Assembly: GCA_965649765.1 (NCBI GenBank) | Contig: OZ287748.1 | Span: 36,084,001 to 36,148,000, forward strand | Reading direction: 5' to 3' | From: Bispira polyomma | Taxonomy: Eukaryota | DNA length: 64,000 nucleotides | In this document: positions 23,160 through 32,645 of the stretch, piece after piece | Layout: every line of letters begins with the position of its first letter | How positions within the stretch are numbered: the first letter of the stretch is position 1 | Program-made: the position numbers and the translations under genes | Notes under the pieces: model-generated | Seen by the model: only the letters and a program-made list of their open reading frames with translations | Database searches by the model: none | Told to the model about the DNA's origin: nothing

Positions 23160-25135
23160 TATTATTATTATTATTTATTATTATAGATTTTTAATGCGCT
23201 TTATTGATGCTAGGCATCTTCTAAAGCGCAACAGCAGAATCATTAGTCCAATCATTAAGTCCATGGAAATTGCAGAGTCGTAAGGAAGGAAGTGGGAGCG
23301 TGCACGAGGAAAGCTAAGGTGGGTAGGCAAGATTAAAAAGATAGGTTTTAAGCTTTTTCCTAAAACCGATAAGTGTGTCAACTGATCTGAGGTCAACTGG
23401 GAGACTGTTCCATAACCGTGGAGCTGCGGTGGAGAACGCTCTGAAACCTGCCCTTCTGATTGGTCTAACCGAAGTGACAGAGAGTCTGTTGCCTCTCTTG
23501 CGGTTACTAAAGGAAAGAAGGGAGGCAAGGTAGGGTGGCTGTTGAGTGATTACAGCCTTAAAAGTGGTAACGTGAATTTTAAACAAAATTCGAAATTTAA
23601 TGGGCAACCAGTGTAATTTTTTGAGGTAAGGAGTAACGTCTGTGCGACAACCTAGGCGAAAAATGACCCTACATAGGTAGTTTTGGATGGACTGGAGCTT
23701 TTTAATGTTTGACTTATTTGCTTCGTACAAGAGAGAATTGCAGTAGTCGAGGCGGCTACTTACAAGGGCATTTGCCACAATTATCGCTGTGTCCATGGAC
23801 AAGTGGTTTCTGATTCTTTTGATGTCGCGTATGTGGTAATAGCAGGATCGACAGATGTTGGCAACATGAGTATCAAACGAAAAAGCTGAATCAAAAGTGA
23901 CACCCAGGTTTTTAGCATTTTCGGAAGGTAGTATGTCTTTTCCCAGCAGGGAGATGGGAAACAAAGATTTTAGGAGTTCACTGTTTTTCTTGTTTCCTAT
24001 GAGGATGAATTCTGTTTTGTCAGGGTTAAGCTTTAGTTTGGAGTAGTTCATCCACGCCGGGACATCAGACAGACAGTCTGCAAGTAGGTTTATGTTAGTA
24101 TCTGCGTTTTGTGGATTGAGGGAGAAATAGACTTGAGTGTCGTCTGCATACATGTGGTGTTTTATATTGTGTTTATTGATGACAGTGCTGAGAGGATGTG
24201 TATAAAGGGTGAAAAGTAGAGGACCAAGGACGGATCCCTGGGGTACTCCATATGGAAGTTTTATGGAAGATGATAGGTGATCATCTAGTTTAATTCTTTG
24301 TGCCCTAAGAGTAAGGTAGAATCTGATCCATTTAAGGACACTGCCATTTATGCCGAACCACTGCTTGAGAGTGTCGCAGAGCAGGACATGATCAATAGTG
24401 TCGAATGCAGCTGAGAGATCCAGAAGGGTGAGGGCCACTGTGTCGTTGCGGTCCAGTGCAAGATTGATATCATTGCTGATGGAAAAAAGGGCACTTTCTG
24501 TAGAGTGAAATTTTCTATAAGCAGACTGGTGGCGATTTTCAATGTTTTGTCTATTAAGGTGGTCTGAAATTTGTTTAGCTACAGCTTTCTCGATGACTTT
24601 TGAGACGAAGCTAAGGTTTGACACCGGTCTGTAGTTTTTGAGATGGTTTTTATCAAGCCCTTGTTTTTTAATCAAGGGAGTTACATTTGCCGTCTTGAAA
24701 CAGGTGGGAAAAACACCATCCCAAAGAGAAAAATTTAATATATTTGTTATGGGTGTGACAAGAATGTCAAGACATTGACTCAGAATAACTGCTGGGATGG
24801 GATCTAAGTCACAAGATTTAATAGTAGAGGATTTGATGAGTTTCAGAACTTCAAGCTCTGACAGTGTACTAAAATGAAACAGGTTACAAACCTTATATCC
24901 TGGGGCTGGAGGTTTGAAGTGATGTATCGTTGGGAAGGCGTCACGAATGTTGCTGATTTTTTCTATAAAATTTTTTCCAAATTTTTCTGCTAAAAAAGTA
25001 AGACAGTGGTTTATGGGGAGAACCTTCTCTGATATTCGATGTAGAATTTTGTTTATGGAGGCCCATAACCTTTTGGGATTATCCTGATTTTCGGTGATGA
25101 TGGAGTCGTAGTGTTGCTTTTTGGCATCAGTAATG
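23160..25135 (-). mobile_element. 5'-truncated L2/CR1-group LINE (ORF2 RT and C-terminal domain) in EMC6 intron 2, antisense to the host gene
   Basis: 453-aa ORF 23314-24675 with NYRPVSNL, LDLSAAFDTIDH, GVPQGSVLGPLLF, YADDTQ, KNLGVTFD, LHWLP, LWNSLP and KLKTYLF; upstream KSCDLDPIP in frame, one frameshift near 24830; (TAA)n 3' tail at ~23160-23183. Confidence 0.95.
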
Positions 25136-26784: not shown

Positions 26785-26897
26785 ATATAAAATTTAGATG
26801 GTGAATTGGTTATTTGCTATGGCGTTTCGATATTTGTTTTCCAGAAAAATGATCAAAATGAGGTTTTTGAATTTACTTAATATTATATTTTTATTGC

Positions 26898-27095
26898 GAT
26901 AAATACACCTTACCTTATCCTCACTAACGCTATATAATTTAGTGCACCTAAATGTTCGACCACAAAAAACACTTAAGTCTTTTTTCAAAGACTATTCTTG
27001 TGATTTGACCTAAATAAATCTCACCAACCTCACTGCGCATGCGCTGGAAGTCCCTTCAATTCTTGTCCTCGAGATACCCTTCACAATTAATTTGG
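26898..27095 (+). repeat. Left inverted terminal repeat of the DIRS-like element
   Basis: Reverse complement of 32125-32319 with about 6 substitutions and a 3-nt indel (by eye). Confidence 0.93.
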
Positions 27096-27317
27096 TCGCC
27101 GTTGTGTCAACACCTAGTTCGATCTACTACTGGAGTTTTTGAAGGAAAATAGATGCTTTATTTCATAAGGCAGGATGTATTATGGCTGAGGAATATGCTT
27201 TCTATAGTTAGTTTCATCATTGGCAGCATTTTTGGAGGGTTTGCCAGACTTTCCATTTCATTAGTGATCTTTGCGTTCATTCTAGTTTTGATGAGTTTTG
27301 GAACAGCACAGGAGTCA

Positions 27318-27456
27318 ACTTAACACAACCAGATGTTGTGGTGTTAACTTTTCACAACGAGATGTTGTGGTGTTAACTTTACACAACGAGATGTTGTGGA
27401 GTCAACACAACGAGATGTTGTGCAGTCAACTTAACACAACGAGATGTTGTGGTGTT
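27318..27456 (+). repeat. ~25-30 bp minisatellite (acacaacgagatgttgtggtgttaactttt) inside the DIRS-like element
   Basis: Five recognisable copies of acacaacgagatgttgtg. Confidence 0.85.
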
Positions 27457-27527
27457 GCTGGATAATTGTTTTGTGTGCCTAGCTCTGTATTCAGGGCATG
27501 GGAGGCACATAGAATTTTCTATGGCGG

Positions 27528-27624
27528 AGATGTCCTAAGAGTGATGTCCTAGCAGTGATGTCCCAACAGTGATGTCCTAGCAGTGATGTCCCAACAGGGA
27601 TATCCTAGCAGTGATGTCCTAACA
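27528..27624 (+). repeat. 14-bp minisatellite (agtgatgtcctagc / agtgatgtcccaac) inside the DIRS-like element
   Basis: About 7 alternating copies. Confidence 0.85.
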
Positions 27625-29257
27625 AAGGAGGTGTGTTGGATTGCTGGTTGATTATTTGGTGGGCCTAGCTCTGTTTTTCAGAGCATAGGAGGCTCATCGA
27701 ATTTTCTATGGCTGATGCGCAGTGTTCTGATGGTGATGGCCTTACAGTGATGTCCCAACTGTGATATCTCAACAGACTCAAAGCTTATAGTTCATGGTGA
27801 ACGCTGGAAGCTCTTAGTATATCTTGAAGATGATGGTCCTTGAGGTTCCTGAAGGCTGAAGTTGCGAATACTATAGCTGCTGATCCCTGAGCTACCTGAA
27901 GATGTGAGCTACCTGGAGATGACTGCTATGTTGCTTATAGTTCATTGTGAATTCTGGAAGCTCTTACTATGTGCTACAGATGAAGATCGTTGTGATACCT
28001 GAAGGCTGAAGTTGTGAACACTACAGCTGCTGATGTCTTACTACTGAGGATCCCTGAATTACCTTCCTGTCAGCTTTGCTACCAGTTCCGATACAAGGAT
28101 GGAAGGGGACCTGGGCAGAAGAGGGTGAATCGTCAGCACACAGGATTGGATAGGGGTTTCCCTGACTAAGATAACATCCAGTTGGATTTTCCCTGAGAAC
28201 TGAAGGTGTAGCATCATTGAGGTACTTAAGATATCTGCTACCCAGAAGGGGACTGCTGTTTGCTGATAGTTCTCTTGTGAATGATAGAAGATCTTTCCAA
28301 CTATTGCATCGATTATTCAGCCATCCAATGCTTGATGTATGTGAGGTATGATCATTGCCAGTACAGAGGGACCCTGATAATGTTGTTATCAGTTTCACTT
28401 CAAGCTATATCGTCAAAATTACTGAGTACTTTCTGATAGAGTTGAGTGGAAGGGGACCTAGGTAGATGAGAGTGAATTGTCAGCATATAAGTTTGACAGG
28501 ACTTCTTTGGCTAGGGAACCTGAACTTTCCCCTGAAACTGGAGATGTACAGAGATGATATTTTCACTGAAGCAGAAGATCTCACAATGTTGGGGAATTTG
28601 AAGAGTAACCAGAGAATTATAGTGTCTTCTCAACAGTACTTATCACAGCCATCATATTCTTCTGATTCTTTGCTGATTTTCTTGACAGAGAGTGTCTACA
28701 TTCTCTTGGAGAATATAGAATCTCTCAGACCCATGATTTTTTCCAGATTCCAGGAGGGATTCACTTTGATAGAAGATGTGATGCAAATTTGAAGATTGGG
28801 CAGAACACTGTCAATTCACCATAATGGCCATGTGTTTGACAGAAACCACTTTTTGTGGAGTGTCCTGGCTTCTCACAGTCTTATCAGCAGAGATTTCTAC
28901 CTAGACGGAGAAGTAATGGTTTTTTATCTCTTACATTGTTGAAAAAGGCCAGGTTCTGACAGTAAAACAGAATACTTGCAGTATTTTAGCTGATTACAGC
29001 CTTCTCCACAGATATATCTATCAAAGACAGTTACGAGAAATCAAATGATGTTTAGTTGGCTATTTCTATTTCCGTGTGTGCTATTCCCGAATTCGGGCAG
29101 TACTGCGAGATGAATACCAGGTTTACCGTTAGTATGGTCTCTTCCCTGAAGTAAACATCACGTGGTGTAGGAGACGAAAATGGATATATTTGACAAATAT
29201 TGTGTATGAAGACGATGCTGAGGGATCTGGGGAGAGTTCTCAATGTGATGACGGATT

Positions 29258-29883
29258 ATGAATGAAAAGGGTTTACTGCTGAGGATAGCAGTATATATAG
29301 ACGAGGTGAGATTTTTCGACGTCTTGGGAAAGAACGATCCCGTTGTGTACTTCTACCTAGCTTCTCAAATTCAACACGAAGAGGTATCTGAATATGGCAG
29401 TTTTGTTAGCGAAAATAGATATATTTGGGTAATGTACACGTCTACTACTCTCATATTCTATTTAATTCAAAGATTCATCAGATTCGCTGAGATTCAACGG
29501 ATTCGTTGTGAGGAATCATTACTGAATGGGCGATAATAGGTGGCAGTAAGACCTACCAATGTACACTTTTATGCTGGCTAATTTGCAGATATTCAAGTTC
29601 CAGGTGGGGAAGCAGTTTCTTGCGAATATTTTTGGATTATTCACCCTTGATGGATGGATATTTAAATTTTTCGACAGGATTATTTTTCGACATTTTTAAC
29701 AACAGTCGTGTTCAAGTCTGGAATTTCTTCACAATATTTCAGTCCATGGGCTGGTTTATTGTTACACAAGGTCAGAAATCGATCCTAGACAGGAAATCGA
29801 GTTTTCTGGGCTATCATTTCGTTCTAAGTCAGGTGACAAAGTCACTGACTTATTTGAAAGCAGAAGCAGTTTTTCCAGCGTAG
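29258..29883 (+). pseudogene. Decayed DIRS RT / RNase H remnants
   Basis: LRIAVYIDE resembles the RT 'GIRxxxYLDD' motif with the second Asp lost; FLGYHFVLSQVTKSLTYL resembles RNase H 'hVLIRSDNTTAVAYI'; multiple stops; resemblance judged from memory. Confidence 0.55.
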
Positions 29884-30101
29884 TGTTTTTGGAAGTTTAC
29901 CAATGATAAACAACTAGTTGGTAGAACAGTATTTACAGAGGCCTACAGTGAAGATTGCAGTACTTGTTTAAGATATTTTATTCCAAATGGAATGAATTGG
30001 TTGGAGTTAAGCAATTTTTTGGCCTTGTTATCTTCAGCATCGAGTTCCAGGCCAGAACGATTTCACAGTTTCGAGACCAGAGATATAGTTACTAATACAG
30101 A

Positions 30102-30614
30102 ATGTTTCACTTCATCGACCAATGCTCGTGCTTCTGTACTTTTTTCCCACATCTAGACGGTTGGCTATTTGATTGGTACTGGATGGAATATGTTTTTGGT
30201 CCTGTGGTCAGGTTTTCCAATTCATGCAGGACATGTTCAAGAACATTTGTCATTGAGGATGGTCCTCGTCATAGGATTATTAGACAGGGAATTTTAAGAA
30301 ACTTAGGACCATTGCTGTGTAGGGTACCTGTTGTTTTGGAGATGTCTGAAACTCATAAACTGAATTAATTGACATCTGAGCTTGCAAATCCTGTTTCACT
30401 AGTGTTCATTCCAGCCATTAAACTGGCCCTGGATGGTTCAGTTCTGGAATTATTTTTTGGTGTCCTGGCAGATCTGGAAGATATTATCTTGTTAGATCTG
30501 ACACAGGTACTATTTCATCTTCATACATACAGTCATATGCTGATGAGCTGTTTTATTTTTCTCAATTTTATTTCTCTTCATGTGTGTATTAGAGTTTTTT
30601 ATTTGGGAAGATGA
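30102..30614 (+). pseudogene. Decayed DIRS tyrosine recombinase remnant
   Basis: LLCRVPVVLEM ~ LLCPVRAL; NPVSLVFIPAIKLAL ~ KPVSxxTISRWIKxxL; FFGVLADLEDII ~ FxGVxLEDI; catalytic HxxR and Tyr not recognisable; in-frame stop at 30366-30368. Confidence 0.55.
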
Positions 30615-30764
30615 TGCCGTCTGAATGTCTGTTTCTTGGCATGACGACTAGAGTGCAGTACCTTATCCATTAAATGGGTGATGGATTGTTTCTCAATCTG
30701 GGTTTTTTCATGCTCTACATGTTTTAGTACATGTATAGAGGCATGCTCTTATTACTATGTCTTC

Positions 30765-31610
30765 AAGTAGAAGGTGGGTTGAATACTTGCTGGTTCATAA
30801 TAAATGTCTAGTGAAGTAACTTTATCCTTCAAATACAGCACCACTTACCATTGAGTAAAGTAGGCTGCTGGTTGAATACTTACTGACACATAAGTAATTG
30901 TTCAGTGAAGTACTTTCTTGGTCCTTGTAATTCAGCACTGCTTACCATGGAGTGAAGTTGTTTTGCTGGTTGAATTCTTACTGTTCATTAAACTGTCCAG
31001 TGAAGTAATTCTTTTTATCCTTAAAGGACAACACTACTTTCATGTTGTTTGGTATGCTGTTGGTTGAATATTTTTACTGGTTGGCAAGAAATTGTTAAGT
31101 ATTTTTCCATATCCTTCCGGTACACCTTCACTTACCTTGGTGTGGAGGGGGTTGCTAGTTGAATTCTTACTGGGTTACTAAACTGTCCAGTTAAGTAATT
31201 CTTTTAATCCTTTAGGACAGCACTACTTTCATTAATTTGAATAGGCTGTTGCTTGAGTGCTTACTGGTTCTCAAGGAACTGTTCAGTGAAGTCACTTTCG
31301 TTTACTATTAAGTACAGCGTCACTTATCATGGAGTGAAGCGACTTTCTGGTTAACTATTTACTGATGCCAGGACACTTATCAGTGAAGTAGTTTTGTCTT
31401 ATTGTTACTACAGTTCTACTTACATTATCTGAGTGGTCTGTTAGTTGAATATTTATTGATTTACAAGGAAATGTCCAGTGAAGTGTCCTTACTTATCTTT
31501 GCAGGATAGCACAACTTGCCACAAAGTCAAGTAGTCTGTTGGTGCCCTACTTACTGGTTTCTTTAGAAACTGTCCAGTGAAGTAATTTCCTTTATACTGT
31601 CTACATACAT
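30765..31610 (+). repeat. Array of nine ~95-bp diverged tandem units, each with a self-complementary stem-loop
   Basis: AGT(G/T)AAGT anchors at ~30810, 30904, 30999, 31093 (degenerate), 31189, 31285, 31382, 31477, 31576; each preceded by a GTTGAATACTTACTG-like motif that pairs with it. Confidence 0.88.
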
Positions 31611-31972
31611 CTTTGCATGTGCTGATGACTTGTCTGTTTTCTCTTGCAAGCTTTTCATTAAGTGGCATCTTGTGAAGAGATCATCTGTGGGATGTGATGT
31701 CATTTTGATGACGGCTAGCATAATAGCCAGATGACATTATCTTCTTGGCCTATTGACATACATATGTGGTACAGTCATATCTGTGTAGAACGCAGCACTA
31801 CTTGTTATTCAGTTAGGTAGTTGGCTGTTTTGTCAGACTTACATGCTTCTCCTGAAGTGACAAGAGTAAGTCAAATGCCTTATCCTCAACAACTAATGCT
31901 TCAAAACTCCTTAATTCCTTAGGTGGGGCTTTGTTTCACACAAATAACCCTCCTCCTTCAAGGTTGGATTCA

Positions 31973-32076
31973 AGCGTTAGTGAGGATAAGGTAAGGTGTA
32001 TTTATCGCAATAAAATGTAAAAATTTTATTGTAATTTATCTTTTTGGAAGATAAATACTTACCTTATCCTCACTAA
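31973..32076 (+). other. Internal complementary region (ICR) of the DIRS-like element
   Basis: agcgttagtgaggataaggtaaggtgtatttatcgcaataaaa is the reverse complement of the left terminus; tgtaaaaattttattgtaatttatc...cttaccttatcctcactaa is the reverse complement of the right terminus. Confidence 0.92.
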
Positions 32077-32124
32077 ACCGGATCCCGTCCCAACCAGCCC
32101 CACTTTTATTTGTGGAAACATCAC

Positions 32125-32353
32125 CCAAATTAATTGTGAAGGGTATCTCGAGGACGAGAGTTGAAGGGACTTCCGGCGCATGCACAGTGAGGTTGTTGAT
32201 ATTTATTTAGGTCAAATCACAAGAATAGTCTTTGAAAAAAGACTTAAGTGTTTTTTGTGGTCGAACATTTAGGTGCACTAAATTATATAGCGTTAGTGAG
32301 GATAAGGTAAGTATTTATCTTCCACAAAGATAAATTACAATAAAATTTTTACA
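32125..32353 (-). repeat. Right inverted terminal repeat plus 3' extension of the DIRS-like element
   Basis: ITR match to 26898-27095; 32294-32353 is complementary to the second half of the ICR. Confidence 0.93.
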
Positions 32354-32413
32354 ATTGCTTTTGCTTTAAATGATGAAAATCAGGTCTTGGTTTGCTTAGT
32401 GACATGAAATATA

Positions 32414-32645
32414 AGGCCACAGTGGGCTAGTGGTTAGAAGCACGTGCTTCGCAATCATTGGCCTCTCTCATCAGTGTGGGTTCAAATCCTGTTTGTTCCT
32501 TCATGTTGGAAAGTTTGTTGGGTACTTGCCGCAGGTTGATGGTTTAGAGTGCTTCTGCCTTGGGTTTTTTCCACCACTAAATCTGTCCATTGCGATATGA
32601 CCCAAGTTGTTGAAATCGACGTAAACCCAAACTAAGTTCTAACTA
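32414..32645 (+). mobile_element. tRNA-derived SINE (same family as 25481-25703)
   Basis: A box tgggctagtgg, B box ggttcaaatcc, same body and tail. Confidence 0.87.

What the first reader, a model, noticed from the sequence alone, without database searches (positions are those of the whole stretch)
30765..31610. Nine-unit array of structured hairpins carried as cargo in a DIRS retroelement
Seen: between the decayed YR and the ICR are nine ~95-nt units (anchor spacing 94-99). Each has an inner stem TACTTACTG(G/A)..loop..(C/T)CAGTGAAGTA, a large asymmetric internal loop and an outer stem (aagtaggctg/cagcactgctt in unit 2). The pair closing the apical loop covaries: ctgA..Tcag in units 2 and 7, ctgG..Ccag in units 5 and 9. 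The loops diverge freely, and units 3 and 5 suggest a ~190-bp higher-order dimer. The period is not a multiple of 3 and the frames are closed. Known: DIRS1-like elements are defined by ITRs, an ICR and gag/RT-RH-MT/YR ORFs; I know of no such hairpin array as a standard part. Inference: structure is conserved while sequence drifts, so this could be a polycistronic small-RNA precursor, a multivalent Gag/packaging signal for parasitising an autonomous partner, or an RNA-binding-protein decoy.
Basis: partly seen in the sequence, partly recalled or inferred. Interest (0 to 1): 0.8.

Follow-up and report, generated by a model that had tools for sequence, protein, structure and literature searches.

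The report
Tandem-repeat array inside non-coding DIRS element
The nine ~95-base units are a real, old tandem-repeat block carried near the 3' end of a high-copy, non-coding DIRS1-type jumping element; each unit keeps a short palindromic core, but nothing shows a selected RNA structure, so it is best read as an ordinary internal tandem repeat of a transposon.

Summary
The array is real: exactly nine diverged units (53-86% alike) at 30763-31618. It lies 355 bases upstream of a textbook DIRS1-type internal complementary region, inside a 5.47-kb element (26889-32356) with inverted terminal repeats and no detectable coding capacity.

It is not cargo of one copy. All 40 scored genomic copies hold the full array at 96-98% identity. 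Related arrays with other loops and unit arrangements sit at the same place in other subfamilies of a clade of about 850 elements.

The hairpin reading is weak:
- Only a 10-bp inner stem with one bulge recurs, in 7 of 9 units.
- Whole units fold no better than shuffles (mean z -0.5).
- RNAalifold gives no covariation credit, and the shuffle control is reached in 255 of 500 trials.
- The supposedly covarying closing pair occurs genome-wide as A-T, G-C, G-T and A-C without association.
- The outer stem is not supported.
- There is no Rfam match.

The two arms are, however, the slowest-evolving part of the unit, and so are the bulged G and unpaired flanks. That points to sequence-level conservation.

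No RNA data were available. Best reading: a replication-generated tandem subrepeat region, as known from other retrotransposons. A multivalent cis-acting motif is not excluded.

The scan noted this host element before (s1-611887).

The parts
26889..27095 (+). Left inverted terminal repeat of the host DIRS1-type element. Its outer 43 nt (26889-26931) are the exact complement of the left ICR.
   Evidence: copy alignments start at 26866-26889
27313..28034 (+). Other internal tandem or direct repeats of the element: short ~27-30-nt repeats at 27313-27456, ~22-28-nt repeats at 27529-27624, and duplications 27432-27576/27620-27768 and 27783-27884/27933-28034.
   Evidence: sequence
28035..30762 (+). 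Non-coding internal region. No open stretch reaches 130 aa, there is no Pfam domain, and there is no similarity to YR-element ORFs of this genome.
30763..31618 (+). Array of nine diverged ~95-nt tandem units. Units start near 30763, 30854, 30951, 31050, 31142, 31237, 31333, 31429 and 31525.
30877..30912 (+). Example of the inner palindromic core (unit 2). The same core lies at 30784-30818, 30975-31007, 31164-31197, 31258-31293, 31356-31390 and 31548-31584. It is decayed at 31069-31101 and 31450-31485.
31973..32015 (+). Left ICR, 100% complementary to the first 43 nt of the element.
32013..32076 (+). Right ICR, 97% complementary to the last 64 nt of the element. It overlaps the left ICR by 3 nt (AAA, the circular junction).
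   Evidence: sequence
32125..32356 (+). Right inverted terminal repeat (32125-32311 pairs with 26909-27095 at 97%) plus the right extension to 32356.

Best explanation
The array is an old internal tandem-subrepeat block, minisatellite-like, in the 3' non-coding part of a non-autonomous DIRS1-type retrotransposon clade.

Inferred origin: an ancestral ~95-nt segment that happened to hold a short imperfect palindrome was multiplied. The likely cause is template switching or unequal recombination during replication, as proposed for tandem repeats in the 3' UTRs of other retrotransposons. The units then diverged by 15-45% while the lineage stayed mobile.

Shown: the present family burst recently, so copies are 96-98% alike and all carry the same nine units.

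Shown: the hairpin is the inherited palindromic core. Its arms, its bulged base and the neighbouring unpaired boxes are conserved as sequence.

Inferred: the most that can be said for function is that this core may be a repeated cis-acting sequence motif. No selected RNA fold is demonstrated.
For: Host element and copy number:
- The host has true DIRS1-type ends: ITRs of 187 nt at 97%, and an ICR made of the complements of both termini overlapping by 3 nt. This matches the published definition (PMC8969392; PMC3266345).
- All 40 scored genomic hits hold the whole 846-bp array at 96-98% identity.
- 20 full copies have no ORF of 150 aa or more inside the element.

Distribution in the genome:
- The hairpin pattern occurs 2238 times genome-wide, against 2 for the reversed control.
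- The matches form clusters of 1-5 with different loops and spacings, including ~190-bp dimers.
- They lie on the same strand, 0.3-1.6 kb upstream of an ICR.
- 15 of 16 exact left-ICR hits on C1 up to 44.3 Mb have such an array, but only 17 of 87 exact ICR-junction hits do.
- Unit number and arrangement therefore differ between subfamilies and are fixed within one. This is the behaviour of hypervariable retrotransposon tandem subrepeats (PMC7004042).
- The same element also has other tandem repeats at 27313-28034.

Structure tests:
- Whole-unit z-scores are -0.31, -1.03, -1.23, -0.35, -0.45, -1.48, -0.73, +1.01 and +0.02 on the + strand, and similar on the - strand.
- The RNAalifold covariation term is +0.09.
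- 255 of 500 shuffles reach the observed covariation.
- There are 0 compensatory changes among 30 copies.
- Rfam finds nothing in the array.
Against: The arms are not evolving like the rest of the unit.
- Among the nine units their mean pairwise identity is 0.84, against 0.58-0.60 elsewhere (p = 6e-5).
- Among 30 copies they show 37 substitution events against 57 expected from base-specific rates (Poisson P = 0.003).
- Stem changes are mostly C>T or A>G, which keep G-U pairs on the + strand: 12 such changes, against 3 G>A (two of them compensated at the closing pair) and 3 transversions.
- The inner hairpins alone fold somewhat better than shuffles on the + strand (mean z -1.5, four units at P <= 0.033) than on the - strand (mean z -0.9).
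- One G-C to A-T double change is fixed in a unit of another subfamily (two rows, hand count).

These points fit some constraint on the core. With the data at hand they do not distinguish pairing from sequence constraint.
Confidence: 0.72

Rival explanations
1. The repeated core is a multivalent cis-acting recognition module on the element's RNA or single-stranded cDNA. A non-coding clade uses it to borrow the Gag, RT or recombinase of an autonomous DIRS partner.
For: The arms are the most conserved part of the units and are depleted in substitutions among copies. The array is almost universal in the clade (15 of 16) and always sits just upstream of the ICR on the sense strand. The clade reached about 850 copies without coding capacity. 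Stem changes are biased to G-U on the + strand.
Against: There is no covariation. The closing pair is A-C in a whole subfamily. Units 4 and 8 have lost the stem in all copies of a successful family. About 80% of elements sharing the same ICR junction have no such array. No partner was identified and no RNA data exist.
Confidence: 0.12
2. The palindromes act at the DNA level as repeated binding sites for a dimeric DNA-binding protein, either a host factor or the recombinase.
For: The arms, the bulged base and the unpaired flanks are all conserved as sequence rather than as pairs. The fold is about as good on either strand for several units.
Against: The 16-nt spacer varies in length (12-22) and in sequence. 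The arms are not a perfect palindrome. No protein is known. In the DIRS model the recombinase acts at the ITR junction, not internally (PMC3266345).
Confidence: 0.05
3. The array is a polycistronic precursor of small RNAs, either miRNA-like or phased.
For: There are repeated hairpins on one strand of a transcribed-type element.
Against: The stems are only 10 bp with a bulge, at -3.8 to -12.6 kcal/mol. That is far below the ~22-bp or longer stems of Dicer or Drosha substrates (established knowledge). No miRNA, snoRNA or other Rfam family matches inside the array at E <= 10. Two units have no stem.
Confidence: 0.03
4. The motifs mimic the U1 snRNA 5' end (ATACTTAC) and bulged 5' splice sites (GTGAAGT). 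The array would then act on RNA processing or nuclear retention of the element's transcript.
For: The 5' arm of units 1, 2 and 9 and the right ICR hold ATACTTAC(C). The outer end of the right ITR holds AAGGTAAGTAT (sequence). Earlier notes of this scan report conserved splice signals in other YR elements of this genome.
Against: The likeness to U1 is recalled from memory and was found post hoc. No canonical GTAAGT occurs in the array. Most units have TCTTAC, TGCTTAC or ATTTAC instead. No RNA data exist.
Confidence: 0.03

Closest known systems
Tandem subrepeats in the 3' untranslated region of LTR retrotransposons (Ogre/Tat lineage; PMC7004042)
   Same: A short array of diverged monomers lies in the non-coding 3' part of a retroelement and is carried by every copy of a family. 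It varies in monomer number and arrangement between related families. Its presumed origin is recombination or strand transfer during replication.
   Different: The host here is a DIRS1-type tyrosine-recombinase element, and a non-coding one, not an LTR element. No expansion into long free-standing satellite arrays was seen: the largest cluster among the first 41 holds 5 exact hairpin matches. The papers on DIRS1-like elements that I read do not mention tandem repeats at all.
DIRS1-like retrotransposons (PMC3266345, PMC8969392)
   Same: The element has inverted terminal repeats, a two-part ICR complementary to both termini with a 3-nt overlap (the circular junction), a right extension, and no target-site duplication.
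   Different: No gag, RT-RH-MT or YR coding capacity can be detected in the window copy or in 20 other copies. About 1.6 kb of the 5.47 kb is tandem or direct repeats.
Non-autonomous retrotransposon derivatives (LARD/TRIM-type, e.g. Dasheng)
   Same: They have intact cis-acting ends, a non-coding interior and high copy number, implying mobilisation in trans.
   Different: The ends are of the DIRS type. No autonomous partner was identified here.

Membership tests
DIRS1-like retrotransposon (structural definition) | Inverted terminal repeats | tested here: met
   26909-27095 against 32125-32311: 187 nt, 97% complementary.
DIRS1-like retrotransposon (structural definition) | An ICR at the 3' end of the internal region. 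Its 5' part complements the start of the left ITR and its 3' part complements the end of the right terminus, with a 3-nt overlap. | tested here: met
   31973-32015 against 26889-26931 (100%). 32013-32076 against 32293-32356 (97%). The overlap is 32013-32015, AAA, and the element starts with TTT. Definition taken.
DIRS1-like retrotransposon (structural definition) | No target-site duplication | tested here: met
   The flanks read ...ATTATAT on the left and GCTTTTGC... on the right, with no shared duplication (sequence).
Autonomous DIRS1-like element | Encodes Gag, RT-RNaseH-methyltransferase and tyrosine recombinase | tested here: not met
   No ORF of 150 aa or more inside 20 copies. No Pfam hit on 20 open pieces. 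No tblastn or tblastx hit with ORFs of 12 YR loci of this genome.
Retrotransposon-internal tandem subrepeat region | Head-to-tail diverged monomers in a non-coding part, present in all copies of the family | tested here: met
   Nine units. Full array in 40 of 40 scored copies.
Retrotransposon-internal tandem subrepeat region | Unit number and arrangement vary between related subfamilies | tested here: met
   Clusters with different loops and 95- or ~190-nt spacings at the same place upstream of the ICR.
Structured RNA family (selected fold) | Covariation above a null, and folding better than shuffles | tested here: not met
   Covariation term +0.09. 255 of 500 shuffles as high. 0 compensatory changes in 30 copies. 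Whole-unit mean z -0.5. Inner hairpins alone give mean z -1.5.
miRNA-type or other Rfam small-RNA precursor | A match to a curated family, or a stem of about 22 bp or more | tested here: not met
   No Rfam match inside 30763-31618 at E <= 10. Stems are 10 bp with a bulge.
Satellite DNA | Long homogeneous arrays outside a mobile element | tested here: inconclusive
   The first 41 clusters on C1 hold at most 5 exact hairpin matches each, and 17 lie beside an exact ICR. The rest of the genome was not listed, and flanks could not be fetched.

The most novel reading that the evidence does not exclude
A clade of about 850 non-coding DIRS1-type elements owes its success to a repeated ~36-nt palindromic core placed just upstream of the ICR. 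The core would act as a multivalent handle on the RNA or on the single-stranded cDNA, through which the elements capture the replication proteins of an autonomous partner. This would be the first described cis-acting trans-mobilisation signal in the DIRS order.
Probability: 0.1. Interest if true: 0.65.

Novelty: new member of a known kind. Interest (0 to 1): 0.25.

Why it matters
As it stands, this documents that DIRS1-type elements, like LTR retrotransposons, can carry old and evolving tandem-subrepeat blocks in their 3' non-coding region. It also shows that a non-coding DIRS derivative can reach hundreds of copies. That is useful for repeat annotation: the array would otherwise be called a satellite or 'cargo'. 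It is also useful for anyone seeking the cis requirements of DIRS replication, which are poorly known. It would matter more only if the conserved palindromic core proved to be a recognition signal.

Tried and rejected
- Tandem Repeats Finder finds nothing in the array, because the units are too diverged.
- Rfam at E <= 10 finds nothing inside the array. There are only weak sub-threshold miRNA-model hits on the ICR palindrome at 31972-32083.
- Pfam on 20 open pieces of the element finds nothing.
- tblastn, blastn and tblastx of 12 YR-element loci of this genome against the element and 20 copies find nothing inside the element. The 'decayed YR' and an autonomous partner therefore remain unidentified.
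- Search for sequencing runs: only three runs of one study were found, all kept as contigs and behaving like genomic DNA, since the unique flanks are covered without differences. There was no RNA run, so expression is untested. The laid contigs only suggest that the ICR and ITR are several-fold more abundant than the interior.
I did not try to pull sequence through long N-run patterns. The comparison across subfamilies rests on the short hairpin matches that pattern searches list, and the closing-pair and inner-stem tallies are hand counts.
- A tenth degenerate unit downstream of the array and a direct repeat flanking it, both seen by eye, were not supported.
- Derivation of the unit from the ICR was considered. 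Only a 9-nt word is shared and there is no profile hit, so it was rejected.
- No tRNA-like SINE head was found at 32420-32460.
- A look-up of earlier findings by sequence was blank.
- A per-column majority state of the 1-kb non-coding array was used inside scripts only to polarise substitutions. No consensus of the element was written out.

Full report

The stretch 30763-31618 holds exactly nine head-to-tail units of about 95 nt.
- A profile built from the nine units finds them at E = 1e-15 to 1e-22 on the + strand. It finds nothing else in the 64-kb window above noise.
- Repeat families show anchor spacings of 94-99, or twice that.
- The units are old duplicates, with pairwise identity of 53-86% and mean column identity of 69%. 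This is why Tandem Repeats Finder reports nothing.
- Only the pair of units 3 and 5 (86%) speaks for a ~190-bp higher-order repeat in this copy.
- All frames are closed; the longest open stretch is 52 aa.

**2. What carries it?**

By comparison with 49 loci from the same genome, the host element runs from 26889 to 32356. Its ends are those of a DIRS1-type element in every detail.
- The inverted terminal repeats are 187 nt long and 97% complementary.
- The internal complementary region has a left part (31973-32015) that is the exact complement of the first 43 nt of the element.
- Its right part (32013-32076) is the complement of the last 64 nt.
- The two parts overlap by the 3-nt junction AAA, and the element begins with TTT.
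- This is the published definition (PMC8969392; PMC3266345).
- The ICR lies at the 3' end of the internal region, so the + strand is the sense strand. The array sits 355 nt upstream of the ICR.

The interior is non-coding.
- No open stretch of 150 aa or more lies inside 20 full-length copies.
- 20 open pieces give no Pfam hit.
- ORFs of 12 tyrosine-recombinase loci of this genome show no similarity to it.
- The 5' part of the element (27313-28034) is also built of tandem and direct repeats. The array is thus not a unique foreign body in an otherwise coding-derived sequence.

**3. How widespread is it?**

All 40 scored genomic matches hold the full 846-bp array at 96-98% identity, on many chromosomes. 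Pattern counts in the 1.035-Gb genome are:

| Pattern | Mismatches allowed | Matches |
|---|---|---|
| 29-nt word of unit 9 | up to 2 | 210 |
| Left-terminus / left-ICR word | up to 1 | 1708 (two per element, so about 850 elements) |
| ICR-junction word | up to 2 | 3995 |
| Generic hairpin (both arms fixed, 12-22 nt between) | 0 | 2238 (2 for the reversed control) |

The listed hairpin matches include arrays with quite different loops and spacings, some with ~190-nt dimers. They always lie on the strand of the ICR and 0.3-1.6 kb upstream of it.

On the first 44.3 Mb of contig 1:
- 15 of 16 exact left-ICR hits have such an array (hand comparison).
- Only 17 of 87 exact ICR-junction hits do.

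So the array is a clade-level feature of the elements with this left terminus. It is variable between subfamilies, fixed within one, and absent from most other elements that share the junction core.

I did not work around that limit.

**4. Is it an array of structured hairpins?**

Whole units:
- On the + strand they give z-scores of -0.31, -1.03, -1.23, -0.35, -0.45, -1.48, -0.73, +1.01 and +0.02 against dinucleotide shuffles. The - strand is similar.
- RNAalifold keeps only a 10-bp inner stem with one bulge, at -3.74 kcal/mol with a covariation term of +0.09.
- On that stem 95% of cells pair, but shuffling partners among units gives 94.7%. The observed covariation is reached in 255 of 500 shuffles.

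Outer stem: read from unit 2, it pairs in 70% of cells against 68.5% in shuffles, and it is not in the consensus fold.

Inner hairpins alone:
- They are modestly better than shuffles, at -3.8 to -12.6 kcal/mol.
- Mean z is -1.5 on the + strand and -0.9 on the - strand.
- Units 4 and 8 have lost the stem.

Among 30 copies there is not one compensatory double change in 85 pairs x 30 copies. There are 37 one-sided changes that keep a G-U pair and 21 that break the pair.

| Closing pair | Rows |
|---|---|
| A-T | 19 |
| G-C | 31 |
| G-T | 28 |
| A-C | 5 |
| T-C | 10 |
| other | 5 |

- Within the one unit type that varies on both sides, the counts are A-T 19, A-C 5, G-T 11 and G-C 4, which shows no association.
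- The A-C mismatch is fixed in a whole subfamily.

With the inner four pairs left free (hand count), breaking changes (about 22) outnumber wobble-keeping ones (about 13). There is a single compensated G-C to A-T change, shared by two copies of one subfamily.

Rfam has no match in the array.

**5. What is nevertheless non-random?**

- The two arms are the slowest part of the unit. Mean pairwise identity among units is 0.84, against 0.60 for the loop and 0.58 for the rest (p = 6e-5).
- Among 30 copies the arms show 37 substitution events against 57 expected from base-specific rates (P = 0.003).
- Arm changes among units are mostly C>T and A>G (12), with 3 G>A, 0 T>C and 3 transversions. The non-stem columns have 36, 32 and 60 respectively.
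- Part of this follows from the G+T-rich sense strand of the whole element and from poorer alignment outside the arms.
- The bulged G of the 3' arm is as conserved as the paired bases. The array holds GTGAAGT eight times and never GTAAGT. The unpaired box GGTTGAAT before the 5' arm is conserved too.
- This pattern is what a conserved sequence motif gives, not what a stem maintained only for pairing gives.

**6. Explanation**

*Most likely (0.72).* This is a replication-generated tandem-subrepeat block in the 3' non-coding part of a non-autonomous DIRS1-type clade. It is the DIRS counterpart of the hypervariable 3' UTR tandem repeats of Ogre/Tat LTR retrotransposons (PMC7004042).
- Shown: the array, its age relative to the family burst, its presence across the clade, its variability between subfamilies, and the lack of covariation.
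- Inferred: the mechanism of origin, and that the palindromic core was simply inherited from the founder unit.

*Rivals.*
- A multivalent cis-acting handle for trans-mobilisation (0.12).
- DNA-level protein-binding palindromes (0.05).
- A small-RNA precursor (0.03, disfavoured by the 10-bp stems).
- A splice-site or U1-like motif array (0.03, a memory-based lead only).

**7. Novelty and limits**

- Tandem repeats inside transposons are well known. The two DIRS-focused papers I searched do not mention them, so this is a new member of a known kind.
- No RNA run exists for this organism in the tools. The three runs laid are genomic-type contigs, so expression is untested.
- The autonomous partner is unidentified.
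- The scan had already noted this host element (s1-611887). It had also noted possibly the same array in another window (s1-585888), which I did not check.

Noticed in passing
window 26889-32356 and genome-wide pattern counts: About 850 elements share this left terminus (1708 matches of a 29-mer, two per element), but about 4000 share the 29-nt ICR junction core. Several DIRS1-type families with a common junction and different interiors therefore coexist. Distances from left ITR to left ICR range from 2.7 to 11 kb, with a mode near 5 kb. Some 6-8-kb members might be coding.
   Followed up: partly
window 32051-32066, 32300-32320 and the 5' arms of units 1, 2 and 9: The right ICR and the hairpin 5' arms contain ATACTTAC(C). 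From memory this equals the 5' end of U1 snRNA. The outer end of the right ITR contains AAGGTAAGTAT, a consensus-like 5' splice site. This is an untested lead. Other notes of this scan report conserved splice signals in YR elements of this genome.
   Followed up: no
window 27313-28034: The 5' part of the same element is a mosaic of short tandem repeats (~27-30 nt and ~22-28 nt) and two ~100-150-nt duplications. Together with the array, about 1.6 kb of the 5.47 kb is repeats.
   Followed up: partly
window 23314-24675, - strand: A 453-aa open frame carries a reverse-transcriptase domain (RVT_1, E = 3e-34). It is a LINE-like element unrelated to the DIRS element.
   Followed up: partly
L025 (G000:C4:82597540-82601389) and L028: Some copies lie in tandem or nested with a second, internally deleted copy. 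Two unit-9 matches lie 2349 nt apart on C4.
   Followed up: no
L034:649-1981: One copy carries a ~1.3-kb insertion at the position of window 28095. Other copies carry internal deletions (for example L033, L040, L050).
   Followed up: no
window 31938-32131 in laid contigs: The summed contig depth over the ICR bin is about 4-10 times that of the array and about 30 times that of 27864-29027. This agrees with the pattern counts, though depth from contigs is a poor measure.
   Followed up: partly
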